Positions 32,928-62,014 of a stretch of 64,000 nt of DNA are shown here, piece after piece. Source of the stretch: Squalus acanthias (Eukaryota); contig CM059440.1 in the NCBI GenBank assembly GCA_030390025.1, positions 67,208,001-67,272,000 on the forward strand. Reading direction: 5' to 3'. The position numbers were made by a program, and so were the translations under genes. Numbering within the stretch: the first letter of the stretch is position 1; the number at the start of each line of letters is the position of its first letter. The notes beneath the pieces are model-generated. The model had not been told where the DNA came from and searched no databases. It worked only from the letters and a program-made list of their open reading frames with translations.

Positions 32928-33227
32928 AGTCATCCAGACTCGAGTCGTCGTTGGCCTGTTCACAGATGTGATTTCCATTAAAAAAAAGTTAAAATTTTAA
33001 AGTTTATACAGACTGCATTTGACACATTAGACCCCCTGTGACCCCACCTCATTGCCTTAGCTGTATCTTGCTATGTCTTTGATATAATGCCTTCCTGACC
33101 TGATTGTTTCTCTGCCGAGGTGTGATAAAAGGCAGTCAGAAAGATTAACTGTAGTCGTCTGACATTGTACGCTACACAGGCATTGTTCTCTGTCTATATA
33201 TGCTTTGCCGATTCGTATTCCTTCACT

Positions 33228-33265
33228 TCACCTGACGAAGGGGAAGCAGCTCCGAAAGCTTGTGA
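33228..33265 (+). ncRNA. Minimal type I hammerhead ribozyme motif in the Penelope terminus
   Basis: TCAC-CTGACGA-stem II-GAAA-GCTT-GTGA; stem I TCAC/GTGA; palindromic AAGCTT at stem III. Confidence 0.7.
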
Positions 33266-33432
33266 TTTCAAATAAAACTTTTGGACTATAACCTGGTGTT
33301 GTGTGACTTCTCAGTTTGTCCATCCCAGTCCAACACCGGCATCTCCGCATCATAAATTACCTGGACTTGGGAACAGGGAGTACAATTTTGAAGTTTGCGG
33401 ATGATACAAAACCTGGCAATGTGGTAAATAGT

Positions 33433-34712: not shown

Positions 34713-35329
34713 GAGCAATGTTCCCCCTAAGCTGCGCATCAATCGCTGTATCTGCAGCAAGCAACAACTCAGGAATATTGTCGTCTGGGAAAATGAGGCA
34801 AAACAAACTTCAAGCTTCAGTCGGTGGATTGCAGGCCAGTAACGCAGAGATCATTCCAGTACAGTGCGAAAGGCCAAACCTTGCACCACTCTGCACATTA
34901 TGCTTGTTTTATAACTACAGATATGGTTTATTCAGCGGGGTAAGGGCTACATACCATGTAACTGTTCGGACTTACTGTTCATTCAAAATAACTTGCATTT
35001 ATACATAGCCAGTAACGTGGAAAAACGCCCCAAGGTGCTTCACAGAGGCGTGATCAGATGCAAATGCACACAGAGCCAAAGAAGGAGATATTAGGATTGG
35101 GTGATCAAAGGCTTGGTCAAAGAGGTGGTTTTTCAGTCGGTTTTAAAGGAGAAAAAAGAGGTAGACCCAAGGTGATTAAGCTTGGCTTCTGTAGGTGTTG
35201 GACTTCAATGTGAATCATAGCGCATAATGCCCACAATGTGTACTGAAGCGAGGTTCCTGCTCACCAAACCTCCAGACCTTGACATAATGGCCATCTTGAT
35301 GGTTTAACTGCTAACCAATTTAACCTGAT

Positions 35330-35910: not shown

Positions 35911-35996
35911 TTTAACCTGATGTTTCCTGTCTGAATTTAAAAGGAACCGGAGATGACCTGGGCAATCCCAGATAGCTAATGTGACCTTGCTAATAG

Positions 35997-36687
35997 TTGT
36001 GAGAAGTCGCACAACACCAGGTTATAGTCCAACAGCTTTATTAGAAATCACAAGCTTTCGGAGCGCTGCTCCTTCATCAGGTGAAGTGAAGAGATGCATA
36101 TAGGCACAGCATATATAGTCAGAGAACACTGCCAGATGATTACAGTTAATCTTTCTAACTGCCCTTTATCACACCTCAGCAGAGAGATAATCCCGGCAAT
36201 CAAAGGTGTGGATGATGTCCAAACAGGTCAGTCAGGAAAACATTACATCAAAGATAATGAGGTGGGGCCACAAGGGGTCACATGTGGCAGATGCTGGGGT
36301 CTGTATAGAAAACAAAAGACTTTTTTTGCTGGAAATCACAGCAGGTCCGGCCGCATCTGTGTAGAGAGAACAAGCCAACGACGACTCGAGTCTGGATGAC
36401 TCTACATCAGGTGGGGTTACATGTAGCATGACATGAACCCAAGGTCCCGGTTGAGGCCATCCTCATGGGTGCGGAACTTGGCTATCAGTTTCTGCTCGAC
36501 GATTTTGCGTTGTCGTGTGTCTCGAAGGCCGCCTTGGAGAACGCTTACCCGAAGATCGGAGGCTGAATGTCCTTGACTGCTGAAGTGTTCCCCGACTGGG
36601 AGGTAACACTCCAGCCTGGCGATTGTTGCGCGGTGTCCGTTCATACGTTGTCGCAGTGTCTGCATGGTCTCGCCAATGTACCATGCT
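35997..36687 (-). mobile_element. Penelope 3' fragment, inverted (left cap of the 18-kb insertion)
   Basis: Reverse complement encodes the GIY-YIG C-terminus (WYIGETMQTLRQRMNGHR...) and 3' UTR of the 30318-33351 family; hammerhead motif at 36048-36084. Confidence 0.93.
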
Positions 36688-39107
36688 GCGAAGAATATCA
36701 TGGTCACCTGGCAACGCGTCGACACTAAAGAGGTTGTCCACAGTTATTATTATGGAGAGGACCAGCTCAGCAAGCAGAATTCTCAATATTCAGGCAGAAC
36801 AAGTCTATTCCCAGAGGAGTTTAAAAATGGAAATGCTTCACTGAAATTAGAAGGAGTAAGACCAAACGACACTGGACTATAGCAGTGTTATGTCAGTAAT
36901 ACAATTGGAAATGATAAAGGAACAGTTTCTGTCAGATTTGCAGGTAAATATACTGAACATATTTCTCTTTTCTTAGTTCCCCATCTTACCTGAAGATGCT
37001 GACTCCTGCTACGGTATTGTAGCCTGGAATACATCCTCTCTCTTTATTCCTAGTGAATGATTAACAGGCCATGTACTGTAAACTTCTTAACGTTAAGTGT
37101 TAATAAGCACAGTGAAGAATGGAGCTAATAGAGCCCATTATATAACCTAGAGCTATTGGAACATTTCTCAAATTACCTTTCTCTAAACTGATTGGATTAA
37201 AAGTTGGAGGAGTTTCACTATATTGGAAAATTTAGTTTTATGATGCCTTAAAATAGCACTAGAGGCTGATTTACGTGGACCCCTCTCTCCAGGTCGAGCT
37301 TCGTCTGGATATGGTCCGGTCACAGCCCTAGCACTCCTTACAGGGCCCTAATGTCAGCAAATGTTAGTTGGAGAAGAGCAGCCAGAATGGCAGAAGATCT
37401 GGTGGGTCACTGTTTTAAAAAAAAACTTCCAGCTACCTTTTGGTTTCTCTTCGCTTTGCTGCCCGGTCCCCTCAGGCCCCCCGACCCGAGTGGGTCCCAA
37501 ACTCGAGGCCCACCATCAGCTTCTTAGACCTGCGCCTATTGCAAGCACTGGCCCTACTCCACCCCTCGGAGCAAGCCCAGGAAATCCCAGGACAGTCTAA
37601 AGGAGGTGGATGCCTGGCATAACTGGTCTTTGCTCCATTTTCCTGACCTTTGTTCCCAGGGAATAGGCGTTCCCTGGGGTAAAGGCCAAGATAATCTGCC
37701 TATGATGTAATGAGATTGCGATCAAATCATTTTTTCATAGAACATAGAACATAGAACATAGAACAGTACAGCACAGTACAGGCCCTTCGGCCCTCGATGT
37801 TGTGCCGAGCATTGTCCGAGACCAAGATCAAGCTATCACACTCCCTATCACTCTGGTGTGCTCCATGTGCTTATCCATCTGAGGATGCTCAACCTGTGCA
37901 GAACTCGAACGTCAAGTACACACTTGACCTCTAACTCTTCTGTGCTGCACTCCTTGTACTCAAAACAAATAAGTGACTGGTAACCAAGAACTTTATAATC
38001 ATTATATTAGGCCGTGCATTGTTCTGCAATATAGCTCAAGCATATACCAAAGGTATATGGCACTGTATCATTTATTACTGAAGAGGCAAGACTGAAAGAT
38101 TGTTTTAATTTCACAGCATACTACAATGAGCCAGTGCTGTTGATCAAACAGAAACTGTCCAGCACCATTTTAACATTTGAGTCCCGAGGCTTTCCTAAGG
38201 CTGATGTTTCTTGGTACAACGGAGACAATCTACATGATTCCCTTTTGTCCAAATGTTTATACCAGCAAACTGCTGATGGTCTGTACATAGTCGAAAGCAC
38301 TATGGAAATCATTGTCACAGAAAGAAGTTCAAACTATACATTCGTGTTAAGAAATGCTGCTGTCAATCAAACTATCTCGAGGACACTTAGTTTTCTTATT
38401 CCAGGTAAGATTTTGCTTTTTTTTCTCACCAATTTTCTTCCTCTCCTTCTCTCTTGAAGGTACCAGGCCACTCTCACACTCAGGTGGGTTATTATTTATG
38501 TGGGAACATTAATAGTGGGTTTTACCAGGCGGATCATCAATGGTGCATCAGAGCTGCACCTGATCCTATCCTCACCTTCGTCCACAAAGGTGCAGTTTCA
38601 GAATGGGTCACTGATAACCCTAGGGCATTAAGACCAATTGTCACATCCATACTGCTGTCCCAGCTGTTATCAGCTAACTCAGCATATATTGAAGGTGGGA
38701 CTGCATGACTCCGCTACTCACTGGAGAGACTCACTGAGCCACTGGAGGACCTAGACTTTTCATTTTAATAATAATAACTGAGTCATCTATTTATTATTTT
38801 AGAAAATGAATCTTTACAAAACAAATTCAATTCACACAATTTTCATCGCTAGCACATTTAAGTTGAGTATTCAGTAATTTGCTCATCACTTTAGTCTCTT
38901 CTACCCACCAGGAAGCCGCAGTAGCATCTGAATAGAACCTCCTTGTGATTTTTTTGAGCTGCTTCTATTTTTATGATTCTTTTTATTCAAGGAATAAAAG
39001 GTTTTTTTCCTCTTTTTTTTCTACTTCCAGAGAATTCAATCGGGAAGAAAGACCGTTCCTGCAATTATTATGCAGCCCTCATCAGTTGCATTCTGGGGAC
39101 TATACTC

Positions 39108-39140
<33 letters not shown>

Positions 39141-39218
39141 GCACTAACTGTGATGTTACATAAACACAGGTATATTAAACCAAAGAAAATGGAATACAAT
39201 AATCCAGGTCCACCATGA
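36686..39218 (+). pseudogene. Partial duplicate of B7-like paralog B (IgV 3' part 36686-36943, IgC 38117-38404, TM 39031-39218)
   Basis: Begins mid-IgV, fused to the Penelope fragment; shares the TAC>TAG stop (36880-82) with the copy at 54461. Confidence 0.92.
37739..37877 (-). mobile_element. Short CR1-type 3' tail inserted after the duplication
   Basis: (catagaa)n tail; absent at the homologous sites ~2708 and ~55609. Confidence 0.85.
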
Positions 39219-39351
39219 GATCACCATGGATTCCAAAATATCCTGATGGTTGTAACCAATTCTCTGCTGGACTTGTATGGTGTTTGGAGTTACAAATGGA
39301 TGTGGTATGAATGCTCTTTGTTCCAATTAATGAGTCTGAATGGTCGGCACG

Positions 39352-40322
39352 TCGCACTTATTGACACTTCCATCTTGTCTGACACCTTCAATCTCAATGT
39401 CTCCTTCGGTTCCTTCTAGACCTCGCTCTAGTACTCAAATCTTAATACATGGGAAATTAAGTATAGCTTAGCATTAGCTTATGAGGCAAATAGCTTGGTG
39501 TTTAAATTAGTGTTTCCTTACAGCTAGAACAGTCATTAGCTTCAAGGTCTCCATTAACTGTTGAATAAAGAAAGTTTATAGGAAGCTAAAAACAAAGATA
39601 AGGGAACCTAAGCCTTGTCTCTGTTACAGCTAGAATAGTCATTAGTTCCAAGGTCTCTATTAACTGTTGAATAAAGAAAGTTGGTAGGAATCTAAAAACA
39701 AAGATAACCAAAGTTTCTGTCTAATTGGGATAGAGATAGGCACAATAGTGTACCATCATAATAATCCATTGTAAGGTTTTACGCCTCAAACATAATGATT
39801 CGGATGTGACTCCATATTGGCAACGGTACGTTTTATTGGTATACAGTCGAAATCAATACAACCGGCAAAGACTAATGTTAACTGATAGTAATTTACAGTT
39901 CCGAAGGATATTACCAAATTCGGTCACTGGAAAGTGTAGCGTGCGATGTCTCCGTTGTATCTTTAATCCGGTCCGGCAGTTGTCTTACAAGCAGAGAAGA
40001 GCATTAGGCTTTCGCCAGTATGGACCGCTCATTAATACCAGCGTACCAGAGAGACGTTAAGCCCTTTTGGCTAGCATAAATCCATCTCTACAGGTACCGT
40101 CGTCCTCCTCTCTATATCTGTACATCTCAGGTCAAACAGTCACCTTTTATCCTTCAAAGTTCTGATCATTTGATTAACAAAGTCCAATCGTGTCTGTCCA
40201 CGCCAGGTTCGCTTAACGAGCAAGTCGCACTTATTGACACTTCTATCTTGTCTGATACCTTCATTCTCAATGTCTCCTTCGGTTCCTTCTAGACCTCGCT
40301 CTAGTACTCAAATCTTAATACA
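39352..40322. mobile_element. LTR-like element with a 98-bp terminal direct repeat (39352-39449 = 40225-40322); duplicate at ~57082-58053
   Basis: TG..CA segment 39450-40322 with an internal ~105-bp tandem repeat; homology to the copy A 3' UTR ends abruptly at ~39347. Confidence 0.55.
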
Positions 40323-40889
40323 TTTCATAATCTCACACCATAGATAGTGTGTATGTATGCTTGTTGGCACAGTTAATTGAACAAAAGACATTGTACCTGG
40401 ACTTTAAAAAACTTGCCAAAGAAGAGCTTTTCAGATGGTTACCTGGGAACCAGATTGGACATACAGCTGCAAAATGGTATAATAAGTAAGACTCCCTTTT
40501 TCACACAGAAAAGCAGGCCAATTAGGAGTTGGGAGCAGATGAGATAAGGGACATGTTACACGCCATGAAGCTTAGTCTTTGGGCTAGGCTGGCTGTAATG
40601 GAAATGTACTGGAGGGGCATGACCACGTTAAATCAGGTGACGGAAGGGATCCAATCAAGGGAAAAGAGGCAGATTCAATTTCACTACAGGCACAGAATTG
40701 TATAAAAACAGACATTTTGTGTTTTAAAGTTTAGTACAATGTTAGGATGCATGTTTACATCTATTGTACTCTGTCTGCCAATCTACTCCGCAGTATTTTG
40801 CCTCAATATTGTAGCCTGTGTGCTCTGTCCTGCACTCCCTGGGAGTATGGCTCCCTGCTCAGAGCACAAGGTCATGGCATTAGTTGTTA

Positions 40890-41418
40890 AGTGTGTACAA
40901 TTCTGGGCACCACACTTTAAGATGGATGTCAAGGCCTTGGAGAGGGTACAGAGGAGGTTTACCAAGATGATACCAGGGAAGAGGGAATTCAGTTATGTGG
41001 AGAGATCGGAGAAACTGGGATTGTTCTCCTTAGAGCACAAAAGGTTAAGGGAAGACCTAATAGAGGTATTCAAAATCATGAGGGGTTTTGATGGAGCAAG
41101 TAGGGAAAAACTATTTCCTCTGGCCAGTAGGTCAGTAACCAGAGGTCATGGATTTAATATAATTGGCAAAAGAGCTAGAGGGGAAATGAGGAGATATGTC
41201 TTCACACAGAAGGTTGTTAAGATCAGGATCGCACTACCTGAAAGGGTGGTAGAAGCAGATTCCATACGAACTTTTAAAAGTCAATTAGACAGGTACTTGA
41301 AGAGGACTAATTTGCAGGGTTATGGGGAAAAAGCTGGGGTGTTGGACTAATTGGACAGCTCCTTCAAAGCGCAGGCATGACGGGCCAAATGGCCTCCTTC
41401 TGTGCTGTGAGAATCTAT
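40890..41418 (+). mobile_element. CR1 LINE 3' fragment (duplicate at ~58620-59149)
   Basis: CVQFWAPH...LERVQRRFTKMIP...LGLFSLE. Confidence 0.88.
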
Positions 41419-42020
41419 GGGGGAGAAATTCCCCTAGAGGGCCATTTGGGGCGCTAAGTCAAAAATGTTTGAAAAGTTAGCACCAAACATTTGAGAAATT
41501 TCCATTTTTTGCTCCAAGAGGGAAGTGGAGCTAAATCAAGTGTCTCGATCCGGGGCGATGTGCTCAGCAGCGCCACATGTGGCCACGTGTGGTGCTGCCG
41601 CGTTGCAGGGGCTCTTCCCTCAATTAAAGGGAAGGGCTCCCCGCTGCGAGCTCTGCATTTTTTTGGGCATCTGCTGGAGCACCGGGGTGCGGGAGTGCCG
41701 CGCGTCTGTTGCTCAGAATTTTTTTTTTTAAATCGCCTATTTTTTTCATGTCGGTCGGCCAGCCACCGCGCTTTTAAATGGCGCCCCGCGAGCGGTCGGC
41801 CTCACTGTTCGCGACCCCTGCAGCAGTCGGTAACATCGCCCGATGGCATCATGATCTCCGGGCGCAGAAGATCGGGGCGATACCTGTTAGCGCCGCCGCT
41901 AACCTCACACAGAATTTCGCAGGAGGCGCAGTTATCGCCTCGGGGGGGGTGGGCGGGGAAGCCATTTGCGCCCCGTTAGCACCTCCCACCGGAGGCATAA
42001 ATGAGGGGAATTTCACCACC
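41419..42020. mobile_element. GC-rich Harbinger-like MITE (duplicate at 59150-59749)
   Basis: Imperfect TIRs GGGGAGAAATTCCCC / GGGGAATTTCACCACC; 3-bp TSD TAT. Confidence 0.7.
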
Positions 42021-42448
42021 TATGATTCTAGATGTGAATGTTGTTTTAAATTTAAACTACCGGTCAGATTTTGCACATTCCCCATTAGGCTAGCTTAAAG
42101 AGCAAGGTCATATGTGTGCTTCAGAATCTTTGATATTTATTCAGATGACCTGAAGCCACAAACTTGGGCACATTCACATCAGTGCACTGTGGGCTAGCTT
42201 TGGCAAGCAGCTTGATTTTGCTGGACCTTACACTCACTTGAACAGCTGAGATCTGCTTGCCAGCACTGTGCTGAGAAACTGGCTTTCAAAATACTTTCGA
42301 ACTCCATTCTCCTGCAACCACCCCCCTTTAATGATACCAGGCCCTTATCGTACCTCCTCAAAGTACTGCCAGACCACAGTCTGTCCCAACACTACTGGAT
42401 CCCAGCCTCCCCTCTAATAACGCCAGATACTACCTCCTCAGTGCTCCT

Positions 42449-42991
42449 TGTAAGAAAGGGTTAACCTGCTCGAAAGCTTGGCGGTAGCATTTATAAATAA
42501 CTAACTGACTAACTAACATAGTTAGCAGCTATTGTGTAGGGAATAGCAGAGTCAGCAACCTGTATCCTGTTATTGAAGCCGGAACAAACCTCAGTTATAA
42601 TGCGAGGAAGACAGGACATGATCAGGAATCTGATTGGTGCAGGCATATGGCATGATCAGAACAGGAACATTAAGGAAAACGAGGGAAGTAAGTATGGTAC
42701 GTGCTGATTGGATTAGGTTGTGTGATATTCTGTTTTCTGGTGCGTAACGGACAAGCGCTTGAGGCTGTTTAGTGTAGAAGAATTTTGAGGCGAGAGGCGA
42801 TGGGAAGCATCCAGCAGGAAGGGAACAGACCTATCGCGTAACATCAAGAGGCAAACTTCTATCCAGGACGGAGCGGGTGATATACTTTCTGCTTGGTTCT
42901 GTAAAATATCACTTATGTACTGTAATGTGTTAAGTTTTACACATCTTAAAGTATCATTGTATCCAATTGGCGTTGAGTCGAATTCCCTACA
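42449..42991. mobile_element. Probable solo LTR (duplicate at ~60178-60720)
   Basis: TGTAAG...CCTACA termini, ATTGG boxes, near-match 4-bp flanks (tcct/ccct). Confidence 0.5.
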
Positions 42992-43088
42992 CCCTGGACC
43001 CAAGACCCCTCTATACAATCCTACTGAAGTAAGATATTAAAAAATTGGACATAACAAGGGCAAGACGGGCATGACTCATTTGCAGAAA

Positions 43089-43218
43089 AGCAGGCCTATA
43101 ACGAGATTAACAGAAGCAGGCCTATAACGAGATTAACAGAAGCAGGCCTATAATGAGATTAACAGAAGCAGGCCTATAACGAGATTAACAGAAGCAGGCC
43201 TATAATGAGATTAACAGA
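43089..43218 (+). repeat. Five 26-bp tandem repeats in an LTR-like segment (~43025-43495; duplicate at ~60818-60947)
   Basis: AGCAGGCCTATAA(C/T)GAGATTAACAGA x5, followed by TATAAA and AATAAA. Confidence 0.85.
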
Positions 43219-43925
43219 AAACGGCTAGCACAGTTCTGGAAACCACATCATGGGCTAGCACAGCATTGTGTGTAAATTATGTGTTATCTTTGTATAAACC
43301 GCCACCCTCGGATAATGAGTAAATGTGTAACTTTTAAAATTAATTGGACCTCCGTAAGGGTAAGGCAGAAATGTTTGTATAAATATGTGTGCTTTGATTA
43401 GCTCGGTGGAGTTGGACTTACACAGCGACGTAAGAGGTTCTCCCCAGGCCTGAATAAACCGTTGTGACTTCAATTACTTGGTCTGTCTTTCTTTCAACAA
43501 GCCAGTAGCGTCGACCTTGTATATCACTTGGTCCGCACTTTGGGGGCTTACTTCACTACCAAATGGTTGGTCCCACCTTTCCAGCACTCTAGCAGCATTA
43601 CCTTGCTCCTGGATTATGGGACCCTTCTCATTGTAGCCCCACACCCAGGGACCCCTTCCCAATGCTCCCATATCTCAGCATCCTCACTGTTAGCTACCAA
43701 ACCACACCATCCTCTTACCATTTTCCCCAGGCTCTAAACACATCATTGTCTTACATAATCTAGTCAAAATTTTATTATGTTGCACAAGCCCAAACCAATC
43801 ACAAGTGAAATGCATACAACACTTCATGCAACACTCTTACCATCCAGACATCACAGATGGAATTGGACACAGAGAAGCATTAACTAACATTACTGTACTT
43901 AACCTGCATCTACGATAACACATTA

Positions 43926-44285
43926 CAGGAAACTCTCGTTTAAACGGCACCTAAATATCCGGAATTCTCTAATAACCGGCAGAATTCATACTCCGAAAAC
44001 TACAGTACAGTATACAGTCGTTTATAAGTTTTGTTTTACTGTTAAGTAATTAAAGAGTTATAGATTACCCTCAACTGGCAGTACTGTACTTAATCAAGCA
44101 TCTTCCACCATCCATTTAACACAACATTCTGTAGGTGAGTACCCAATTATACTGCACATTTCTTGATTTTTTTATTTTTGTTTGTTAAAAATAGCCTCGG
44201 TAGATATACCTCTCCGTTATCCGGAATTTTTATTCAACTGGCACCATCCCGGTCCCATCGGTGCCGGATACGAAAGAGTTTCCTG
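43926..44285 (+). mobile_element. 360-bp MITE derived from the Tigger at 14577
   Basis: Same TIRs and TA TSD; the first ~75 bp are joined to the last ~290 bp at an AAC microhomology. Confidence 0.95.
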
Positions 44286-45354
44286 TAACACCATCTTCTT
44301 CTTCTTTTCGTGTCTTCTCGCTGTTCGGGGAACAGCGTGAAGTAACGGAAGGATTCACAGGTTGATTAACAGTCTGACTGGCCGCGTTAACGCTCCTTCC
44401 ATGGCCGTAACCATCTTTATACCAGCTGATAGGGTGGTTAGCCCTATAAGCCGGGAAGGTTTCTGGGCTCCCCCAACCCATACGATGAGGGGGGGGTGGG
44501 CCACCCACACCCACCGGATGCAAGTGTCCCGCTGGATGTCAACCCAGAATTCAAAGCCGGAGCTTCGACTCCACTCGCCGGGACTGTCTGGAGTGGGGTT
44601 TGAACCCTGCACCTTCTGGCCCAAAGGCAGGAATGCGCCAAAGGCTCACGCCAATACCACCATAAAGTTAAGCATTGAGAATTACAATAAATATTTGATT
44701 CTTCAATGTACCACAATGTCTCAGCCTTGGCTGGGTTTTTGCTCACACAGTATTCCAGGGCTATAGTCAAAGTTCACCACTGGAGTACAGCTTACCAAGG
44801 TTAAGTTTATTGCTTGTATGCAATGTATCACTGATACATTTCAGCAGTTGGCCAAAATGTGTCAGCCTTGGCTCAATCGTAGCACTCTTGCCTCTGAGTC
44901 AGAAGATTGTGGGTGCAGGTCCCACTTCAGAATCTTGCGTGCATAATCTAGGTGACACTTCAGTGCAGTACAGATGAAGTGAGTAGCACATTGGCTGAGG
45001 AAAGCGTAAGTAGGAGATAACTACATTACAAATGTAGTGGGAAGCAAATTATGACTATTGGGTAACCATGGAAGATCTGTTATAGGGAGGACCCATTGTA
45101 TTAAAAAATAATAACTTAATATGCAGTTCTAGCAATATTTGATACCTTAAATCTGGAAAAAAGTTATTAATTCTTGTGTCCTACTCTGTTGCCAATGTAT
45201 TCTTTGGCAGTACAGAATGGAGATTAATTCTGGACACTTTGCCCAAATATGGCCCTGACATTCTGCAGGACTACCACTGGTCTTCCATCATAACTTTGGT
45301 AAGAGAGACCAGAGAAAAGGCATAATTGCCTATTTACAATATTTTTCTGGGGGT

Positions 45355-46110
45355 TCTTCTTCTTCTTCTCAGGCAGTCCCTCGGAACCGAGGATGACTTG
45401 CTTCCACATTAAGAATGAGTTCTCAGGTGACTGATGAGTCCAATGCGGGACCTACAGTCTCTGTCACAGGTGGGGCAGACGGTGGTAGAAGGGGCGGGTG
45501 GGTGGGGTGCTTGGGTTGACGTGTGCTCTTTGCGCTGCTTGCGCTTGGCTTCCGCTTGCTCCTGGCGAACAGACTCGAGGTGTTCGTCGCCTTCCCAGAT
45601 ACTTCTCCTCCACTTTGTGCAGTCTTAGGCCAGGGATTCCCAGGTGTCGGTGGGGATGTTGCACTTTTTCAAGGAGGCTTTCAGGGTGTCCTTGAAGCGT
45701 TTCCTCTGCCCACCTGGGGCTCTCTTGCCGTGTTGCAGCTCCGAGTAGAGCGCTTGTTTTGGGAGTCTCGTATCAGGCATGCGGACGATGTGACCCGTCC
45801 ATCGGAGCTGATCGAGCGTGGTCAAAGCTTCGATGCTGGGGATGTTGGCCTGAGCGAGAACACTGACGTTGGTGCGCCTGTCCTGCCAATGGATTTGCAG
45901 GATCTTGCGGAGGCAGCATTGGTGGTACCTCTGCAGTGCTTTGAGGTGCCTGCTGTACATGATCCATGTCTCTGAGGCATAAAGGATGGCAGGTATCACC
46001 TACTGCTCTGTAGACCATGAGCTTGGTGTCGGGTTTGAGGTCCTGGTCTTCAAACACTCTCTTCCTCAGGCGACCGAAGGCTGCACTGGCACACTGAAGG
46101 CGGTGTTGGA
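45355..46110 (-). mobile_element. RTE-clade LINE 3' fragment (duplicate at ~63080-63835)
   Basis: LYASETW...QLRWTGHIVRMPDTRLPKQALYSEL; (GAA)n tail. Confidence 0.88.
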
Positions 46111-46374
46111 CTGGGGGTTCTTCCAGTCTCTCAGCAAAGTTACGATAGGAGACTGATGGTAGCCCCATGGAACTTCAGGGCCAGAAATGTTTAGTGCAGT
46201 AACCAGCTGGAATAGCAACTGCATTGTTAAACACTTGTTATGGCAGATGTGTTGTGATTGCCATCCACAGGGACCAATTCATTTTGTGAGAATCATCCTA
46301 CTTGAGAGTAGGTCACACCTGCATTAGCAAGCGCCAGACCCAAAACAAAAGGGTTCTAACTAGAACATTTCATT

Positions 46375-47670
46375 CACTTCGCTTCCAATTTCCACCCTTC
46401 CCTCACCTTCACATGGTCCATCTCCGACTCTTTCCTTCCCTTCCTCGACTTCTCTGTCTCCATTTCTGGGGATAGGCTATTGACAAACATTCACTACAAG
46501 CTCACTGACTCCCACAGCTACCTGGACTACACTTCCTCCCACCCCACTTCCTGTAAGGACTCTATTCCATTCTCCCAGTTTCTCCGTCTCCGCCGCATCT
46601 GCTCTGATGATGCCACCTTCCATACTAGTGCTTCCGACATGTCTTCCTTTTTCCTCAACCGAGGATTCCCCTCTACCATGGTTGACACGGCCCTTGACCG
46701 TGTCCGTTCTATTTCCCGCACTTCTGCTCTCACCCCTTCCCCCCCCTCCCAGAACCACGATAGGGTTCCCCTTGTCCTCACCTTTCACCCCACCAGCCTC
46801 CACATTCAACGGATAATCCTCCGCCATTTCCGCCACCTCCTGCGTGATCCCACCACCAAACACATTTCCCCTCCCCTCCCCTTTCAGCATTCTGAAGGGA
46901 CCGCTCCCTCCGCGACACCCTGGTCCACTCCTCTATCACCCCCAACACCCCTTCCCCTTCCCACGACACCTTCCCATGCAAGTGCAGGAGATGCAACACC
47001 TGCCCTTTTACCTCCTCCCTTCCCACTGTTCAGGGCCCCAAACACTCCTTCCAGGTGAAACAGCAATTTACTTGTACTTCTTGCAATTTAGCTTCCGGTC
47101 GCCTGTCACTTTAATTCTCCGCTCCACTCTCACTCTGATCTCTCTGTCCTCGGCCTCTTACACTGTTCCAACGAAGCTCAAGGAACAGCACCTCATCTTT
47201 CGATTAGGCACTTTACAGCCTTCTGGACTCAACATCGAGTTCAACAGTTTCAGACCATAACCTCGGCCCCTATTTTTTAAAATTTATTTTTTCTCACACA
47301 TGGCAGCTGTTAATGATCCTGCCATTGCCATTTACACCTCATCTAGAGTCATCTTTTGTTTCTTAACTTGTCCCATTACCATCTCCTTTTGCCTTGCACC
47401 ATCATCCCTGTTGTCTTTTAATCTCTCCCGCCTTCCATCCTATCACAGACCTTCCCTTTTGTTCTTTCCTCCCCTCCTCCCTTTCCCTGCCCCTACACTG
47501 GCTTAAAAATCTGTTACATCTCTTAACTTTTTCCAGTTCTGACGAAGGGTCATCGACCTGAAACGTTAACACTGTTTTTCTCTCTCCACGGATGCTGCCT
47601 GACCTGCTGAGTGTTTCCAGCATTTTCTGTTGTTATTTCAGATTTCCAGCATCCGCAGTATTTTGCTATT
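46375..47670 (+). mobile_element. Penelope-like element (second family), 3' part; hammerhead motif at 47536-47570
   Basis: YKLTDSHSYLDYTSSHP...SIPFSQFLRLRRICS; GTT-CTGACGA-AGGGTCATCGACCT-GAAA-CGTT-AAC. Confidence 0.88.
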
Positions 47671-48234
47671 GAAAGGGGTTCTTTAACTGTTTATAGCTAT
47701 CAGAGCAGATCATAACCACAGTTTAGTCATTCTCTGAAAGGCAAAGGTTGATTAACGTTTTGAGTGGAACCTCTTGATGGGAGTTCTGATGAAGGGTTCC
47801 CTCTGAAATGTTAATCTTGCTTTCTCTTTCAGGTGTTGATCGCCCCGCTGTGCATTTCTGGAATTTTCTGTTATTAATTAAGGTTTCCAGCATTTGTAGT
47901 TTTTCTTTTTATCGCTATCCTTTTTAAGTTAGATTTGATTTGATTTTGACTTTAGTTTGCAAGAGGGAATTAAAAATCAATGAGACTGATTTATTATTTA
48001 TGTGGAATCTTTGATAAATAAATTACATTTGGTGTAATTAGATCAGATCTCAGAAATGTGAACTGTGTGAACAAAGTCCTAGCTCTCAATAAATTAATGC
48101 TAACAGAAGACATTTACAGGAGTAAGTGCCTCTTAAAGAGTTTGATGCTAAAATTCATTTAATGATGTGATTGAATGGATTACAGGGTTAGTGTCACTGA
48201 TGCATTATCATTGGTTGAGCAGCAATGTATATGA

Positions 48235-50370
48235 CAATAACAACAGAAAATGCTGGAAGCACTCAGCAGGCCAGACAGCATCCGTGGAGAGAGAAACAGA
48301 GTTAACGTTTCAGGTCTGTAACCCTTCGTCAGAACTGGAAAAAGTTGGAGATGTAACAGGTTTTAAGCAGGTGCAGAGGCAGGAAAAGGGGGGCGGGGGG
48401 GAGGAAGGAACTAAAGGCACTAAAGTCTGTGCTAGGATTGAACTCAGGAGAGATAAAATGTTGCAAATGGGGATAGCAGAATCATCAACAGCTGCCGCCT
48501 GAAAAAATGGGGGGGTTATAGTCTGAAATTGTTGAACTCAATGTTGAGTCCAGAAGGCTGTAAAGTGCCTAATCGAAAGATGAGGTGTTGTTCATCGAAC
48601 TTACATTGAGCTTCTTTGGAACAGTGTAAGAGGGCAAGGACAGAGAGGCCAGAGTGGGAGTAGAGCGGAGAATTAAAGTGACAGGCGACCGGAAGCTCGG
48701 GGTCACCCTTACGGACTGAACGGAGGTGTTCCGCAAAGCGGTCATCCAATCTGCGCTTGGACTCCCCAATGTAGAGGAGACCGCATCGTGAGCAGCGAAT
48801 ACAGTATACTAAATTGCAAGAAGTACAAGTAAATTGCTGTTTCACCTGGAAGGGGTGTTTGGGGCCCTGGACAGTGGGAAGGGAGGAGGTAAAAGAGCAG
48901 GTGTTGCATCTCCTGCATGGGAAGGTGCCGTGGGGAGGGGAGGGGCTGTTGGGGGTGATAGAGGAGTGGACCAGGGTGTTGCGGAGGGAGCGGTCCCTTC
49001 GGAATGCTGAAAGGGGAGGTGAGGGGAAGATGCGTTTGGTGGTGGGATCACGTTGGAGGTGGCGGAAATGGCGGAGGATGATCCGTTAAATGTGGAGGCT
49101 GATGGGGTGAAAGGTGAGGACAAGGGGAACCCTATCGTGGTTCTGGGAGGGAGAAGGGGTGAGGGCAGAAGTGCAGGAAATGGAACGGACACAGTCAAGG
49201 GCCGTGTCAACCACGGTAGAGGGGAATCCTCGATTGAGGAAAATGGAAGACATATCGGAAGCACTGGTATGGAAGGTGGCATCGTCAGAACAGACGCGGC
49301 GGAGACGGAGAAACTGGGAGAATGGAATAGAGTCCTTACAGGAAGCGGGGTGGGAGGAAGTGTAGTCCAGGTAGCTGTGGGAGTCAGTGGGCTTGTAGTG
49401 GATGTTTGTTGATAGCCTATCGCCAGAAATAGAGACAGAGAAGTCAAGGAAGGGAAGAGAAGAGTCAGAGATGGACCATGTGAAGGTGAGGGAAGGGTGG
49501 AAATTCGAAGCAAAGTGAATTAAATTTTCCAGTTCAGGGCGAGAGCAGGAAACGGCACCGATACAGTCATCAATGTACCGGAAAAAGAGGTGAGGGAGGG
49601 GACCTGAGTAGGACTGGAACAAAGAATGTTCCACATATCCCACGAAAAGGCAGGCATAGCTCGGGCCCATGCGGGTTCCCATAGCAACACCTTTAATTTG
49701 GAGGAAGTGAGTGGAGTCAAAGGAGAAGTTGTTCAATGTGAGAACAAGTTCATCCAGGCGGAGGAGGGTGGTGGTGGAAGGGGACTGGTTGGGCCTCTGT
49801 ACAAGGAAGAAGTGGAGCGCCCTCAGGCCATCCTGGTGGGGGATGGAGGTGTAGAGAGATTAGACGTCCATAGTGAAAAGGAGACGGTTGGGGCCAGGAA
49901 ACTGGAAACTGTTAAAGTGGCGGAGGGCTTCGGAAGAGTCGCGAATATAGGTGGGAAGAGACTGGACAAGGGGAGAAAAAATAGAGTTGAGATAGGAAGA
50001 GATAAGTTCCGTGGGGCAAGAACAGGCTGAAACGATGGGTCTACCGGGGCAGTCCTGTTTGTGGATCTTGGGAAGGAGGTAGAAGCGGGCTGTGCGGGGT
50101 TTGGGGACTATGAGGTTGACAGCCATGGAGGGAAGATCTCCAGAGGAGATGAGGTCAATGACAGTCTTGGAAACAATGGCTTGATGTTTGGTAGTGGGGT
50201 CATGGTCCAGGGGGAGGTAGGAGGAGGTGTCAGAGAGTTGGTGTTCAGCCTCCGGATGGTAGAGGTCGGTTCGCCAAACAACAACGGCACCACCCTTGCC
50301 AGCAGGTTTAATGACAATGTTAGGGTTGGATCGGAGAGAACGGAGTGCTGCAAGTTCAGAGGGAGGTAGG
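48235..50370 (-). mobile_element. Penelope-like element (second family), RT-GIY-YIG with frameshifts; hammerhead motif at 48300-48336
   Basis: IKPAGKGG, LPKIHK, GVAMGTRMGP, RYIDD, LVYCIRCSRCGLLYIGE. Confidence 0.92.
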
Positions 50371-52367
50371 CTGGAGTGAGTATGTATATGACAAACTCCC
50401 TTTCGATATGTTCCTGCCATTATCATCCAGGTTTGTCAAATCCAATGCACTTTCTCAGCTAAAGTAAATGAAAATATTGGTTCAACTTCCAAATACAGCA
50501 TTGAAAATAGCTGAAAGAGTTACTGCTCTGTAGATGTGGCATGATTGACATTGCACAATCACAGGTGACTGTCACTCGATTTAAAACACAATTACCCACT
50601 TCTTCTTCCGGAAATTTGAGATTGTGCATCCCACAATGTGCTACGGTTTGAACATCACATCCTAGACACAATAATCAAGGACAGAGTAAGTCAGGGCTGT
50701 TGCAGAAACTGTCACTTCTTTCGGAACAAAATGTAAACCTACCTTTAATGCACAGCCATATTCTGCGACGGCTGTAATTTTGATAAAAGCCCCTCCGTGC
50801 AGCACTTTCAACTGTTACTTCCACATACATTCCAAAAGGAATTTTTGTTGAAGTGGTATGGGTGACTCATTCCAATTTTAAGTTCTCCCAATGTCTCAGG
50901 GTAAATGTACCAAGTGATCCAGTATTGAGCTACACGGACCAAGCAGTTTCCAGGTTCAGCCCCTGGTCTGTCTGTGCTCAGGTAGCTGATCTGAGCCAGG
51001 GTGGCAGTTGCATTAAATAAAACTGGGAAGGAAAAAGTCAGCTAGGGTACCTCCCCTCGATTGCTGACCCTTGCTGGAAAGTATCCATGTGTGAACAGCG
51101 GGTGAGGCCTGGATTGAGCTCACCTCCGATGCCTTTCATGGTTGAGTAGCCTGCTCACACTCACTGTCTAGGCTCACACATGGCGAATGCCCAAGGAACT
51201 GTTTTCAGTTTGGAAAGGCCTGATGTCCATTGAACCACATTTGCTTTGGTGAGGGCTGCCAGTGAGGAGGGGGGAGGGGAGAAAGGTGGAAGAAAAATAT
51301 CACTAAAAAGTAAAAGAAATCTTAATTTTAGAATATCAGAATCATCCATATCTACTCAATACACTATGTGATATTTAAAATAGATCTTTAACTTTATGTA
51401 ACTGAGTACGAGAGACTAGACTGATTCCCACTCCATACTCTATTTCACCAGACATAGTGCAGCCTACGTGCAGCATCAACCCACCCTCCAACCATGCGAT
51501 CTTCTAGGAAAGGCAAAAAAACTGAGAAGAAAACTTCAGTTTAATCTGAGAAAAAACCTTGCTCCTGATAGCCCGGCGAGGTTAGCGGCAGAGGTACCCA
51601 GTGGGCGGATTCTGGTCCTCGCACAGGGATCAGAGCCTTTTTGAGGCCTACATCTTTAAGATCTTTTCTTCTGACGATCAGGAAGTTGATTTCCAAATGC
51701 ACCTGTTTTATACAGACGCTCAGCAATGGTGCCATGCTCGAGGAGTTACCAACAGAAAACAAAGGGTAGGGAAGCCCCACCCTAATGTACATGTTTTTGG
51801 GGCCTTTAATGAGGCCTACACATTCAAGCAGCATGAAGGCCTTAAGCCTCCAGTGCTGTCCATTTGGAACATACTGGGCAGCTCGCTCCCAACACAGTCA
51901 AGCAGTCCCCCTTGATGCCTGGGTTTCTGCCTTCCCTGTGCCCAGCACACAGTTGTGCCAATGCTGCAAGGCAGAGGAAAATCTCCTTTTGTTTGTTTAC
52001 ATTCACAAATTCTCGACATGGAAGACAGAGGGGGCTAAATTCGATAACTCCAGAAAACGGGCACGGGATTGTGATGCGCGATCAGCCCACGCCCGTTCAA
52101 TGTAATGCAGGCAGCAACTTTGTGCTGCTTGCTCATTTCAATGATTTCACCATGCAGCCAGTGCTAACCGTGCTGTTAATTGGCTGAACGCATCAGCGGG
52201 GGGGGGGGGGGGGCAAAATCATGAGAAGATAGCACCAGTTAAAGCTAGTCTGCACTGCTTAACATAGCCAGCATCTCTTAAAGGGGAGGTGCATTGTGGC
52301 TGGAGCAGGTGCTGGAAGTCCTTCAGGAAGTGAATCTGTCCTGGGAAACAGTGAAGAATGGGACAAC

Positions 52368-53790
52368 ATGGGAGAGTGTACTCCAAAGTTTTCCGACGCT
52401 GCACTGGAGGCCTTGGTGGAGGAGGTGGAAAGGAGGAGAGATGTCCTGTATCTGCAGGGGGCCAGGAGGCCCTCCAGACGCACCCTCAGAAGGCAGTGGG
52501 AACAAATAGCCGTGGAGCTCAATGCCAGGAGTCTAGCCCTGAGGACCTGGATGCAGTGCTGCAAGAAGTTCAATGACCTCACACGAGTGGTCAAGGTCAG
52601 TGAATGCATCTTCAAATACCATATCCTACCAACTGCACCACAAGCCTCAGCCGCTGCTCAATGCATCACACCCCCATCAGTCACCTACCAACAATCTCTA
52701 TCAATCAGGACTCATACCTAACATTCATAGCTTCAACTCACCCTCACACACTTAGCACTGCTCTGCAAGCCTCACACCCACATCTCACAGCTTACACACA
52801 CTGCCAGCTATTCAACCATGACAACCACATCACCCAAACAGATTGCATGACATTCACTAACACAATTCCCTCTCTCTTGCAGGACAAGGTGGCGCACAAC
52901 CGGAGGCAGCAGGAGCTAACCGGCGGGGGACAGGCGCACCTTCATATCCTGACCCCCGTGGAGGAGATGGCGCTGGCCATTATTGGAGTGGCCATTGCTG
53001 AGGCCGTGGCCAGTGGCGGGGCTGAAACCATCGAAGATGACGATATCTTCATACCTAATCCTCCTTCTTACATCCCACTTCCCCCTCATCTCACAATCTC
53101 TTCTGATTTACAAGCTGCAGATAGTGTAAGCATGCACCTCTGATTTTCCCACCCTCCCCTCACCACAACCTTACCCTTGTGCCTTTCTCCTTTCAGATAC
53201 CCAAGTACTGCAACCTGGTCAGGCAACGGTGGAAGAGCAAGAAGACAGTGATGATGAAGACACGCCATCACTCGATTTAACAGCCACCAGCTCAGATACT
53301 GACGCTGCGCGTAATTTAGAGGATAGCATAGAGGCGGGATCTGTACATGGTGAGACACGGGGCACGAGTGTGCTGCAGCCAGAGCAGGGGACAAGGGTAG
53401 CGCAGGTGCCAGCTCGCCGGAGGGCGAGGTCGCACACGAGTTCTGCTGCAGAGGACTCAGATAAGGATTTCAATGGGGCTGGCTATCGAAGAAGGCTGAT
53501 GGGTATGCACAATGAAATGCTTGGTGCATTGGGAAGCCTTCTAGAAAAGCCTGCATGGAGGAGTTCGGCACTAACTTGGCACAGGGCTTTGTTCAGAGCT
53601 CGGAGCCCATCCTTTCCAGCATGGAAGTGGTGGCCAACTCCATTCGCACACTTGTGGGCCAAACCATGATGCAGCCTCTGATGGCCAATGTCTCAGCTTC
53701 CATTGCAGCACAAGCAGCAGCCACCCAACGTCTGAGTGCTGCAGTGGAAGCTCAGACTGCTGCCATCATGGTTCTGGATTCCAGTCTTCA
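52368..53790 (+). pseudogene. Spliced Myb/SANT-like DNA-binding gene of a Harbinger-type transposon, truncated at the duplication breakpoint
   Basis: Exon 1 52368-52595 (FSDAALEALVEEV...WEQIA..LNA...RTWMQCCKKFNDL|GT); exon 2 from 52883 (DKVAHNRRQQELTGGG); exon 3 from ~53198 is acidic; TIR-like GGGGCTAAATTCG at ~52031. Confidence 0.75.
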
Positions 53791-53836
53791 AAGGAGATGG
53801 TGCAGTCCACGGCCGGGCCTTCTCGGCCCAGAGCTG

Positions 53837-53980
53837 CTATATGCATCTCTTCACTTCACCTGACGAAGGAGCAGCGCTCCGAAAGCTTGTGATTTCTAAT
53901 AAAGCTGTTGGACTATAACCTGGTGTTGTGCGACTTCTCACATTTGTCCACCCCAGTCCAACACCGGCATCTCCGCATCA
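53837..53980 (+). mobile_element. Penelope 3' terminus (right cap of the 18-kb insertion); hammerhead motif at 53856-53892
   Basis: Near-perfect inverted copy of 35998-36103, extended to the family 3' end CTCCGCATCA; stem II GGAGC-AGC-GCTCC. Confidence 0.92.
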
Positions 53981-54460
53981 TTGCTAATAGCCATTATGTG
54001 TTAGCTTCAGTGCCTCCATTTTTCTGGCCAATCTGCTATTAACACCTCACAAACATGGGATGTTGCCAACCCGTCTGCTCCTTCCTACACCCCCATTGTC
54101 CCAACTAATCTCCAATATTAGCATATCCTAATCGGACAATGACCCGGGATGTTGTGATTAACTTTGATGGGACAAGGCTGACACAGAGCAAATTCGAACA
54201 TGAGACACATGTAATATAGTTTTTGTAAGAGCTGTGACCTGTTGGAGATTAAATAAAACCACTAATAAGGTTTATAAACCAAAAGAGAGCAACTGATATC
54301 CTGATTTTTAAGAGTTTGTCTGATTGTCTCATGATTTGAGATGGTTGGGTGGCAATATGGCATTACTGTATATACGCTTTCAAGTGGTTGCTGTTGTTGT
54401 ATTTTTTAGCAATTTCTGTTGCAGATTTCCAACATTTTATCCTTCCTCTTTAATTTACAG

Positions 54461-61654: not shown

Positions 61655-62014
61655 CAGGAAACTCTCGTTTAAACGGCACCTAAATATCCGGAATTCTCTA
61701 ATAACCGGCAGAATTCATACTCCGAAAACTACAGTACAGTATACAGTCGTTTATAAGTTTTGTTTTACTGTTAAGTAATTAAAGAGTTATAGATTACCCT
61801 CAACTGGCAGTACTGTACTTAATCAAGCATCTTCCACCATCCATTTAACACAACATTCTGTAGGTGAGTACCCAATTATACTGCACATTTCTTGATTTTT
61901 TTATTTTTGTTTGTTAAAAATAGCCTCGGTAGATATACCTCTCCGTTATCCGGAATTTTTATTCAACTGGCACCATCCCGGTCCCATCGGTGCCGGATAC
62001 GAAAGAGTTTCCTG
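61655..62014 (+). mobile_element. Tigger-derived MITE (duplicate of 43926-44285)
   Basis: Same TIRs, TA TSD and flanks. Confidence 0.95.

What the first reader, a model, noticed from the sequence alone, without database searches (positions are those of the whole stretch)
35987..53990. 18-kb genomic duplication capped by outward-facing Penelope termini and bounded by a 10-bp TSD
Seen in the sequence, in order: TTGCTAATAG (35987-35996); an inverted Penelope 3' end (35997-36687); ~17.1 kb of host DNA starting mid-IgV exon and joined through a 2-bp CT microhomology; a direct Penelope 3' end finishing at the family terminus CTCCGCATCA (53837-53980); TTGCTAATAG again (53981-53990). At least the first 9.6 kb of the cargo is a ~99% copy of DNA starting 566 bp downstream of the right TSD (54557 onward). 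The related Penelope at 30318-33351 ends in the same terminus and has a TSD of the same length, an internal control. Established: Penelope-like elements often leave inverted terminal copies. Inference: one GIY-YIG staggered cut was primed on both ends with Penelope RNA 3' termini, and the two short cDNAs were bridged by synthesis on neighbouring chromosomal DNA. The result resembles a composite transposon and duplicated most of an immune gene. If general, this is a retroelement-driven route to tandem gene-family expansion that I do not recognise as described at this scale.
Basis: partly seen in the sequence, partly recalled or inferred. Interest (0 to 1): 0.92.

Follow-up and report, generated by a model that had tools for sequence, protein, structure and literature searches.

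The report
Penelope insertion enclosing a 17-kb local duplication
A Penelope-like retroelement insertion, bounded by one 10-bp target duplication, holds about 17 kb of copied neighbouring chromosome, including most of a B7-H3-like pseudogene, between its two outward-facing ends, which suggests that integration of this retroelement can seed local segmental duplications.

Summary
TTGCTAATAG occurs only at 35987-35996 and 53981-53990. Inside it lie an inverted Penelope 3' fragment (35997-36687), 17.1 kb of non-Penelope DNA, and a direct 144-bp Penelope 3' end (53837-53980).

The first 9.6 kb of the cargo copies 54557-64000 at 99.4-99.7% identity and joins the inverted arm through a CT microhomology. 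The source of the last 7.6 kb lies outside the window and could not be checked.

Both arms end at termini of the family. Only the direct arm carries the 38-nt "tail", which is the published canonical architecture of Penelope-like elements (PLEs).

My best reading (0.5) is one integration in which both cut strands were extended on Penelope RNA and the gap was bridged by microhomology-primed DNA synthesis on adjacent DNA. A two-step history (0.25) cannot be excluded.

The idea is not wholly new. PLE-framed, intron-containing host genes within one TSD were reported in a rotifer (PMC3846280), and L1-linked duplications are known. The new element is a local, tandem, apparently DNA-templated 17-kb capture in a vertebrate.

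The duplicated gene already carries an in-frame stop, so this copy was dead on arrival. Unchecked first-stage notes report smaller Penelope pairs enclosing nearby DNA elsewhere in this genome. Neither the junctions nor an empty site could be verified with reads.

The parts
35987..35996 (.). Left copy of the 10-bp target-site duplication TTGCTAATAG (70% A+T)
35997..36687 (-). Inverted, 5'-truncated Penelope 3' fragment. It holds the C-terminal GIY-YIG-like coding part (ORF 36417-36725, minus strand), the 3' UTR and a hammerhead-like motif at about 36048-36084. Its outer end is the short, tail-less family terminus.
   Evidence: short terminus seen in other copies, table 7
36686..36687 (.). CT shared by the Penelope arm and the source exon (junction microhomology)
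36688..46274 (+). Cargo, verified part: a copy of 54557-64000. It carries the 5'-truncated IgV exon (36688-36972, stop at 36880-36882), the IgC exon (38107-38403) and the TM/cytoplasmic exon (39018-39215) of a B7-H3/CD276-like gene.
37739..37877 (.). 139-bp repeat-derived insertion with a 3-bp loss. It is present only in the copy and absent from the source and from the older paralogue.
46275..53836 (+). Cargo, unverified part (its source would lie beyond the window). It holds fragments of a second PLE family (46358-47671 plus strand; 48238-50381 minus strand), low-copy DNA at about 50.4-52.0 kb, and a very high-copy Myb_DNA-bind_5 element from about 52.1 kb whose open frame is cut at 53836.
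53837..53980 (+). Direct 144-bp Penelope 3' end. It holds a hammerhead-like motif (53856-53892) and the 38-nt tail (53943-53980), and ends in ...CTCCGCATCA.
53981..53990 (.). Right copy of the TSD TTGCTAATAG
53991..54556 (+). 566-bp spacer between the insertion site and the start of the template. It is partly repeat-derived and includes the splice acceptor and the first 94 nt of the source IgV exon.
54557..64000 (+). Source (template) of the verified part of the cargo. It holds the IgV exon remainder (exon 54463-54843, stop at 54751-54753), the IgC exon (55841-56137) and the TM/cytoplasmic exon (56752-56946).
30318..33351 (+). Related Penelope copy used as internal control. It has an 802-aa ORF with an RT and a GIY-YIG-like C-terminus, the same terminus, and a 9-10-bp TSD, (A)TAAATTACC.

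Best explanation
This is one integration of a Penelope-like element at the A+T-rich site TTGCTAATAG.

The GIY-YIG endonuclease made a cut staggered by 10 bp, and both 3' ends were extended on Penelope RNA. The right-hand end started at the full terminus and made 144 nt. The left-hand end started at the internal, tail-less start site and made 691 nt.

The two cDNA ends were not joined to each other. [quoted passage not shown] The new strand was then released and joined to the other cDNA end. The result is an 18-kb unit with outward-facing Penelope termini inside a single TSD, and a tandem, direct copy of the neighbouring DNA.

Shown:
- the TSD;
- both arms and their termini;
- the 9.6-kb copy;
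- the microhomology;
- the direct, adjacent template.

Inferred:
- that capture and integration were one event;
- which of the two ends primed the synthesis;
- that the last 7.6 kb came from the same template.
For: The TSD is unique to the two outer flanks, and neither arm has a TSD of its own.

The arms are 105/106 identical where they overlap. They are far closer to each other than to the in-window relative (80-92%).

The direct arm has the 38-nt tail and the inverted arm lacks it. Contigs from other copies of the family leave the laid stretch at two places: 53940-53944 (26 contigs in X1, 25 in X2) and 53981 (80 in X1, 97 in X2, 14 in X6). These are among the 24 rows shown of 2,380, table 7. 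The inverted arm therefore ends at a genuine family terminus.

This matches published PLE anatomy and the in vitro finding that both strands are cleaved and extended from two internal RT start sites (PMC8557442, PMC3846280, PMC11167929).

The cargo is collinear with DNA starting 566 bp downstream, in the same orientation, at 99.4-99.7% identity. The left junction is Penelope coding sequence fused mid-exon with a 2-bp overlap. That excludes homology-driven exchange.

A later, independent break would have to fall at the inner junction of the arms, or erase all sequence of the other orientation. This favours a single event (inference).

First-stage notes elsewhere in this genome describe Penelope pairs enclosing 49 bp to several kb of nearby DNA. 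They are unchecked leads only.
Against: No read or contig evidence spans any junction. The one reads call met only short Logan contigs, and the right junction lies in very high-copy repeats.

No empty site and no intermediate allele could be examined.

The source of 46275-53836 is outside the window, so a Penelope tail at the end of the source is not excluded.

The arms differ at 1 of 106 positions (a C/T in the CTGAYGA box), against 0.21% substitutions in the cargo. This is not significant, but it gives no support for equal age.

The 139-bp insertion and the clustered differences show later or accompanying change. The differences are 20 substitutions and 6 indel events in 9,452 aligned bp, with no difference of any kind between 39875 and 41948 and no substitution in 39875-45369. 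Gene conversion among paralogues is also evident.

Nothing distinguishes synthesis during integration from repair of a later break.
Confidence: 0.5

Rival explanations
1. Two steps. An ordinary fold-back Penelope insertion (691-nt inverted arm plus a direct arm, 10-bp TSD) came first. Later, a double-strand break inside it was repaired by microhomology-primed copying of downstream DNA, with loss of any arm sequence of the wrong orientation.
For: Fold-back PLE insertions without cargo are the norm in the literature. Unchecked notes on this genome also report them. Both junction types fit any MMBIR or SDSA repair. The arms show 1 difference in 106 nt, against 0.21% in the cargo, so the arms could be older.
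Against: It needs a second rare event placed at the arm junction, or degradation that leaves purely inverted sequence on the left and purely direct sequence on the right. The 106-nt inverted repeat would have had a 584-bp spacer, which is not an obviously fragile palindrome (inference).
Confidence: 0.25
2. RNA-mediated mobilisation. A read-through, unspliced transcript of the downstream region ended in a Penelope tail lying at the end of the source. The Penelope machinery reverse-transcribed it, 5'-truncated at 54557, as proposed for the pLTR-framed NRPS gene of Adineta vaga.
For: [quoted passage not shown] The gene and the direct arm are on the same strand. Penelope tails are extremely abundant here (bin 53800-53999), so a tail near the end of the source is plausible.
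Against: A trans-acting RNA copy has no reason to land 566 bp upstream of its own template in tandem orientation. It would also need 17 kb of unspliced RNA carrying nested transposons. The end of the source cannot be seen.
Confidence: 0.08
3. Assembly artefact: a mis-join or false duplication at Penelope repeats, with the 0.2-0.6% differences being allelic.
For: PLE inverted structures are known to upset assemblies (PMC8557442 passage). The divergence is in the range of heterozygosity. No junction was confirmed by reads.
Against: There are no N runs in the window. Two novel junctions, two canonical family termini and a perfect TSD form one coherent biological structure that a mis-join would not create. 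At 51662, both independent samples X1 and X2 carry the window's T (depth about 12-13) beside the A (about 10) that relatives X6 and X18 have. This hints at two real copies of the right half of the cargo (table 3). It is weak, because contig depths are unreliable.
Confidence: 0.07
4. Ordinary DNA rearrangements unrelated to retrotransposition. For example, a tandem duplication with one breakpoint at the arm junction followed by a 720-bp deletion, or insertion of an excised or circular 17-kb fragment.
For: The locus is a tandem array of B7-H3-like genes with ongoing gene conversion. The older copy at 976-4173 is 97-100% identical to the source over 55639-56994 but only 82-95% upstream.
Against: It needs two or more independent events whose breakpoints coincide with the inner ends of the arms. 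There is no long homology at the left junction. A re-opened circle would usually be permuted, but the visible 9.6 kb is collinear.
Confidence: 0.05

Closest known systems
Penelope-mediated mobilisation of intron-containing host genes in the rotifer Adineta vaga (Arkhipova, Yushenova, Rodriguez 2013, Mob DNA 4:19; PMC3846280; abstract, section 9 and passages read)
   Same: Host DNA with introns lies between Penelope terminal sequences, including an inverted one, inside a single short TSD (8 bp there, 10 bp here). It is linked to the growth of a multigene family. Other non-coding captures between solo terminal repeats are also reported.
   Different: In the rotifer the copy is at a new chromosomal location, lies between two direct pLTRs plus one inverted pLTR, and is read as RNA-mediated action in trans; an empty allele was shown. 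Here the copy lies 566 bp from its template in tandem. The arms are 5'-truncated 3' ends (one includes coding sequence) with no upstream direct repeat. The left junction shows microhomology, and no empty site could be tested.
Canonical PLE insertion architecture: an inverted 5'-truncated copy next to the element, with a 30-40-nt tail at one end (Craig et al. 2021, PMC8557442; Frangieh et al. 2024, PMC11167929; passages read)
   Same: Outward-facing 3' termini, a tail on one side only, a short TSD in an A+T-rich target, and two alternative RT start sites.
   Different: The interior is not Penelope sequence. It is 17.1 kb of other DNA.
L1 twin priming, and L1-associated duplications and templated insertions (PMC7058536; PMC11702581; twin priming only as cited in PMC12350158; passages read)
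   Same: Both ends of an endonuclease-made break are used. A cDNA end engages other DNA and yields duplications, templated insertions or inversions at the integration site.
   Different: It involves a different element class and endonuclease. In twin priming the two segments come from one RNA and barely overlap, whereas here they overlap by 106 nt. In the reported L1 tandem duplications the element sits between the two copies, not around one of them.
MMBIR/SDSA templated insertions (PMC2621351, search listing only)
   Same: Microhomology at the junction, and a nearby template copied in direct orientation over a long tract.
   Different: Here the primer ends appear to be retroelement cDNAs at a TSD-marked endonuclease cut.

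Membership tests
Endonuclease-positive Penelope-like element (insertion of) | ORF with a reverse transcriptase followed by a C-terminal GIY-YIG endonuclease | tested here: met
   The reference ORF at 30519-32927 matches RVT_1 at 30.1 bits (cut-off 29.6). Its C-terminus is 36% identical (E 3e-11) to the ORF of the second PLE family, which does match Pfam GIY-YIG. The RT cores are 31% identical (E 2e-34). The arm ORF matches GIY-YIG only weakly (E 0.037, below the cut-off).
Endonuclease-positive Penelope-like element (insertion of) | Short target-site duplication flanking the whole insertion unit | tested here: met
   The 10-bp TTGCTAATAG occurs only at the two outer flanks. The control copy has a 9-10-bp TSD.
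Endonuclease-positive Penelope-like element (insertion of) | An inverted 5'-truncated copy at the 5' side, giving outward-facing 3' termini | tested here: met
   definition from passages in PMC8557442 and PMC3846280
Endonuclease-positive Penelope-like element (insertion of) | A 30-40-nt tail present at one end only | tested here: met
   The 38 nt at 53943-53980 are present on the direct arm and absent from the inverted arm. Two classes of terminus appear among other copies (table 7).
Endonuclease-positive Penelope-like element (insertion of) | A hammerhead ribozyme motif in the terminal region | tested here: inconclusive
   CTGAYGA, a 5-bp stem II and GAAA are seen by eye, and the MFE fold gives the three-way shape (z-score only -0.23). 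Rfam gives no hammerhead match at gathering score or at E up to 10. Recognition of the motif is recalled.
Endonuclease-positive Penelope-like element (insertion of) | Pseudo-LTR (a direct terminal repeat from partial tandem insertion) | tested here: not met
   The self-comparison finds no direct repeat between the ends of the control copy or within the focal unit. The literature describes pLTRs as frequent, not obligatory.
PLE-mediated host-gene mobilisation in trans (sensu Arkhipova 2013) | Intron-containing host DNA framed by PLE terminal sequences within one TSD | tested here: met
PLE-mediated host-gene mobilisation in trans (sensu Arkhipova 2013) | A copy placed at a new, unlinked location through an RNA template that ends in PLE cis-sequences | tested here: not met
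   The template starts 566 bp from the insertion site, in tandem. Whether the source ends in a Penelope tail cannot be seen.
PLE-mediated host-gene mobilisation in trans (sensu Arkhipova 2013) | An empty site with a single copy of the TSD | not testable with these tools
L1-type twin priming | The inverted and direct segments derive from one RNA and abut with little overlap | tested here: not met
   The arms overlap by 106 nt of the element.
Microhomology-primed templated insertion (MMBIR/SDSA-like) | Microhomology at junctions, and a nearby template copied collinearly | tested here: inconclusive
   At the left junction the overlap is 2 bp (5 with one mismatch), and the template is 566 bp away and collinear for 9.6 kb. 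The right junction cannot be scored without the source.
NAHR tandem duplication | Long homology at both breakpoints | tested here: not met
   The left junction fuses Penelope coding sequence to the middle of an Ig exon.
Composite transposon | The whole unit is mobilised again from its outer ends, giving several copies with different TSDs | not tested
   There is no second copy of the unit in the window, and the genome could not be scanned.

The most novel reading that the evidence does not exclude
Penelope integration intermediates have both strands cut and both ends carrying short cDNAs. In this reading they regularly prime long-tract DNA synthesis on adjacent chromatin, so each such event leaves a TSD-bounded, Penelope-capped tandem segmental duplication. 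In Penelope-rich elasmobranch-type genomes this would be a general, retroelement-driven route to growth of tandem arrays, immune-gene clusters included. The captures would range from tens of bp to at least 17 kb.
Probability: 0.25. Interest if true: 0.8.

Novelty: new variant of a known kind. Interest (0 to 1): 0.6.

Why it matters
If the capture was part of the integration, this locus is a natural record of a PLE intermediate in which both cut strands were extended. So far that has been seen only in vitro. It would also show that the resulting ends can recruit the cell's long-tract repair synthesis.

That would give a concrete, sequence-diagnosable mechanism for some tandem segmental duplications in PLE-rich vertebrate genomes: outward Penelope termini, a tail on one side, a 9-10-bp TSD, and microhomology to a nearby template.

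For this particular gene the functional effect is nil. Source and copy share a premature stop, and the copy lacks its 5' end.

Tried and rejected
Reads. The look-up of sequencing runs listed 20 runs, all kept as Logan contigs and none as raw reads. I laid 4 of the 20 (X1, X2, X6, X18) on 51200-57199. The bins from 52200 to 54399 have summed contig depths of about 10^3 to 10^6, against about 10-60 in low-copy bins. The junctions at 53836/7 and 53980/1 therefore sit in repeats that k=31 contigs cannot cross. No contig listed in table 8 bridges any junction (32 rows shown; 106,620 not shown). Loose ends before 53837 only show the Penelope sequence of other copies. The tool itself warns against using contig depth, so I draw no copy number from it.

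Empty-site paralogue. Neither flank (35700-35996, 53981-54420) has another copy in the window.

Rfam. There was no hammerhead hit at gathering score (30000-55000) or at E up to 10 (53780-54000).

Older paralogue as a guide to the right half of the cargo. Collinearity ends after about 3.2 kb plus two short blocks.

Rejected readings. Two independent Penelope insertions are rejected because neither arm has its own TSD. NAHR is rejected because there is no homology at the left junction. A giant-TSD model is rejected because the element would then lie between the copies, not around one.

Literature. Six searches were answered. In the listings shown, only PMC3846280 links PLEs with capture of host genes, and I saw none that describes a local, tandem, DNA-templated capture by a PLE. 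Subscription papers and supplements were not visible. The supplementary figures of PMC11167929 (tail mapping) and of PMC3846280 may bear on the tail and capture claims.

Full report
1. WHAT IS THERE

TTGCTAATAG occurs exactly twice in the 64-kb window, at 35987-35996 and 53981-53990. Shuffles expect 0.15 matches, and 1 of 100 shuffles gave two or more.

Directly inside the left copy, 35997/8 to 36687-36690 is the reverse complement of positions 32651-33313 of the Penelope copy at 30318-33351. That is the end of the ORF plus the 3' untranslated part.

Directly inside the right copy, 53837-53980 is the last 144 nt of the same family in direct orientation, ending in ...CTCCGCATCA.

The two arms share 106 nt and differ at one position, a C/T in the CTGAYGA box.

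The in-window relative has an 802-aa ORF with a Pfam RVT_1 match. Its C-terminus is homologous to the GIY-YIG domain of a second PLE family in the window. It is flanked by a 9-10-bp duplication, (A)TAAATTACC.

2. THE CARGO

Two blocks of the cargo copy downstream DNA:
- 36686-37738 copies 54557-55609 at 99.43%.
- 37878-46274 copies 55612-64000 at 99.69%.

In total there are 20 substitutions and 6 indel events in 9,452 aligned bp. No difference of any kind falls between 39875 and 41948, and no substitution falls in 39875-45369.

The copy starts in the middle of an Ig V exon. The bases CT at 36686-36687 belong both to the Penelope arm and to the source. The next three bases would extend the overlap to 5 nt with one mismatch.

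The remaining 7.6 kb (46275-53836) has no partner in the window, because its expected source lies beyond base 64000. It contains two fragments of another PLE family, about 1.6 kb of low-copy DNA, and a Myb_DNA-bind_5 element whose open frame runs into the Penelope arm. That element is very high-copy in all four runs laid.

The copy carries a 139-bp repeat fragment at 37739-37877, with a 3-bp loss. Both the source and the older paralogue lack it.

3. THE GENE

The V exon is closest to CD276/B7-H3 among solved structures (E 6e-28). A 288-aa database protein that is 80% identical over the V domain (P0014) maps onto three exons in each of three gene copies:

| Gene copy | V exon | C exon | TM/cytoplasmic exon |
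|---|---|---|---|
| Older paralogue | 1026-1403 | 2941-3234 | 3853-4041 |
| Copy (cargo) | from 36688 (truncated) | 38107-38403 | 39018-39215 |
| Source | 54463-54843 | 55841-56137 | 56752-56946 |

These are small two-Ig genes in a tandem array.

The source and the copy share an in-frame stop just before the second cysteine of the V domain, at 54751-54753 and 36880-36882. The older paralogue has tyrosine at that position. The copy also lacks the acceptor site and the first 32 codons of the V exon.

The event therefore duplicated most of a pseudogene. Only about 2.5 kb of the 17.1 kb is genic.

The older paralogue is 97-100% identical to the source over 55639-56994 but only 82-95% upstream. Gene conversion therefore operates in this array. 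The conversion boundary coincides with the 139-bp insertion site.

4. HOW THE ANATOMY COMPARES WITH WHAT IS KNOWN OF PLEs

Published descriptions (passages read) state two things. An inverted 5'-truncated copy often lies next to the element, so that inverted repeats flank the unit. A 30-40-nt tail is often present at one end only.

Here the direct arm has a 38-nt A/C-rich extension (53943-53980) that the inverted arm lacks.

Contigs from other copies of the family, in independent runs, leave the laid stretch at two places: 53940-53944 (26 contigs in X1, 25 in X2) and 53981 (80, 97 and 14 in X1, X2 and X6). These are among the 24 rows shown of 2,380, table 7. The family thus has two termini, and the inverted arm ends at the short one.

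Frangieh et al. 2024 (passages) report that a purified PLE protein cleaves and extends both DNA strands, and that it starts reverse transcription at two internal sites whose spacing is the tail.

The hammerhead motif is visible by eye, and the fold has the right shape. Rfam does not score it.

5. MECHANISM

Because the two arms share a TSD in trans and neither has its own, they stem from one integration.

The cargo was placed between them by a process without long homology, from a template that starts 566 bp away, in direct orientation.

The most economical account is that a cDNA 3' end annealed by microhomology to nearby DNA (the opposite end of the break, the sister chromatid or the homologue). 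It then primed displaced-strand synthesis for about 17 kb and was joined to the other cDNA end. I give this 0.5.

A later break inside an ordinary fold-back insertion, repaired in the same way, gives the same product (0.25). It needs the break, or subsequent degradation, to leave purely inverted sequence on one side and purely direct sequence on the other.

Reverse transcription of a read-through pre-mRNA ending in a Penelope tail is the model proposed for the rotifer NRPS case. It would not explain a landing 566 bp upstream of the template (0.08). It stays open until the end of the source is seen.

An assembly artefact (0.07) is unlikely given the internal coherence of the structure, but no junction was confirmed.

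Multi-step rearrangements unrelated to retrotransposition get 0.05.

6. EVIDENCE FROM PUBLIC RUNS

All 20 runs found were Logan contigs, and I laid 4 of them. The right junctions lie in high-copy repeats, and no listed contig bridges them.

The useful by-products were these:
- the two family termini;
- the repeat status of 52.2-54.4 kb;
- relatives (organism H, X18) hold 51200-52259 at about 96% and 55607-57181 at about 98%;
- at 51662, X1 and X2 each hold the window's T beside the A that the relatives have, which is compatible with two copies of the right half of the cargo but also with a shared polymorphism.

At several sites where the two window copies agree (55269, 55654, 56588), X1 and X2 show another base. 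These runs are thus not simply the assembled haplotype. Whether they carry the duplication is unknown.

7. NOVELTY

Arkhipova et al. 2013 (PMC3846280) already showed an intron-containing NRPS gene framed by Penelope terminal repeats with an 8-bp TSD and an empty allele. They also reported other captured sequences and linked this to expansion of gene families.

L1-bridged tandem duplications, and templated insertions at L1 sites, are documented (PMC7058536, PMC11702581; passages).

In the listings shown from six answered searches I saw no account of a local, tandem, apparently DNA-templated capture of this size between PLE arms, nor any in a vertebrate.

First-stage notes on other pieces of this genome describe smaller Penelope pairs enclosing nearby DNA. 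These are unchecked and are used only as leads. If they hold, they would favour the one-event reading and generality.

8. VERDICT

This is a real and neatly diagnosable structure. It is a new variant of a known kind rather than a new category. The key mechanistic step is inferred, and the decisive checks (end of the source, spanning reads, empty or intermediate alleles) are still to be done.

Interest is 0.6.

Noticed in passing
window 54751-54753 and 36880-36882: The source and the copy of the B7-H3-like V exon share an in-frame stop (TGL*QCYVS). The older paralogue at 1026-1403 has Tyr there, so the duplicated gene was already a pseudogene.
   Followed up: yes
window 976-4173 versus 54413-57078: An older tandem paralogue of the same two-Ig gene. 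Identity to the source jumps from 82-95% to 97-100% at about 55610-55640, which suggests a recent gene-conversion tract over the IgC and TM exons. The boundary coincides with the 139-bp insertion site in the copy and with the start of the organism-H contig (55607).
   Followed up: partly
window 37739-37877: A 139-bp fragment of a repeat (it begins with CATAGAAC repeats), with a 3-bp loss and no TSD or 3' end. It is present only in the duplicated copy. It could be a template switch during copying or a later filler insertion.
   Followed up: partly
window 33439-34713: A 24-bp minisatellite (55 copies, 93% matches) that starts 88 bp after the 3' end of the Penelope copy at 30318-33351.
   Followed up: partly
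window 46358-47671 (+) and 48238-50381 (-): Two fragments of a second PLE family lie tail to tail. The minus-strand one has a 13-bp TSD, ATGTATATGACAA, at 48225-48237 and 50382-50394. Further tail fragments of this family lie at 28521-28660, at 35328-35909 (77 bp from the focal target site) and just upstream of the V exons (925-998; about 54380-54412).
   Followed up: partly
window about 52100-53836: The Myb_DNA-bind_5 'gene' at the end of the cargo is a very high-copy element in all four runs laid, which come from at least three organisms. It looks like a transposon family rather than a host gene.
   Followed up: partly
window 53856-53892 and 36048-36084: The Penelope terminal hammerhead-like motif is not detected by any Rfam hammerhead model, even at E up to 10. 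The two arms differ at the variable base of the CTGAYGA box.
   Followed up: partly
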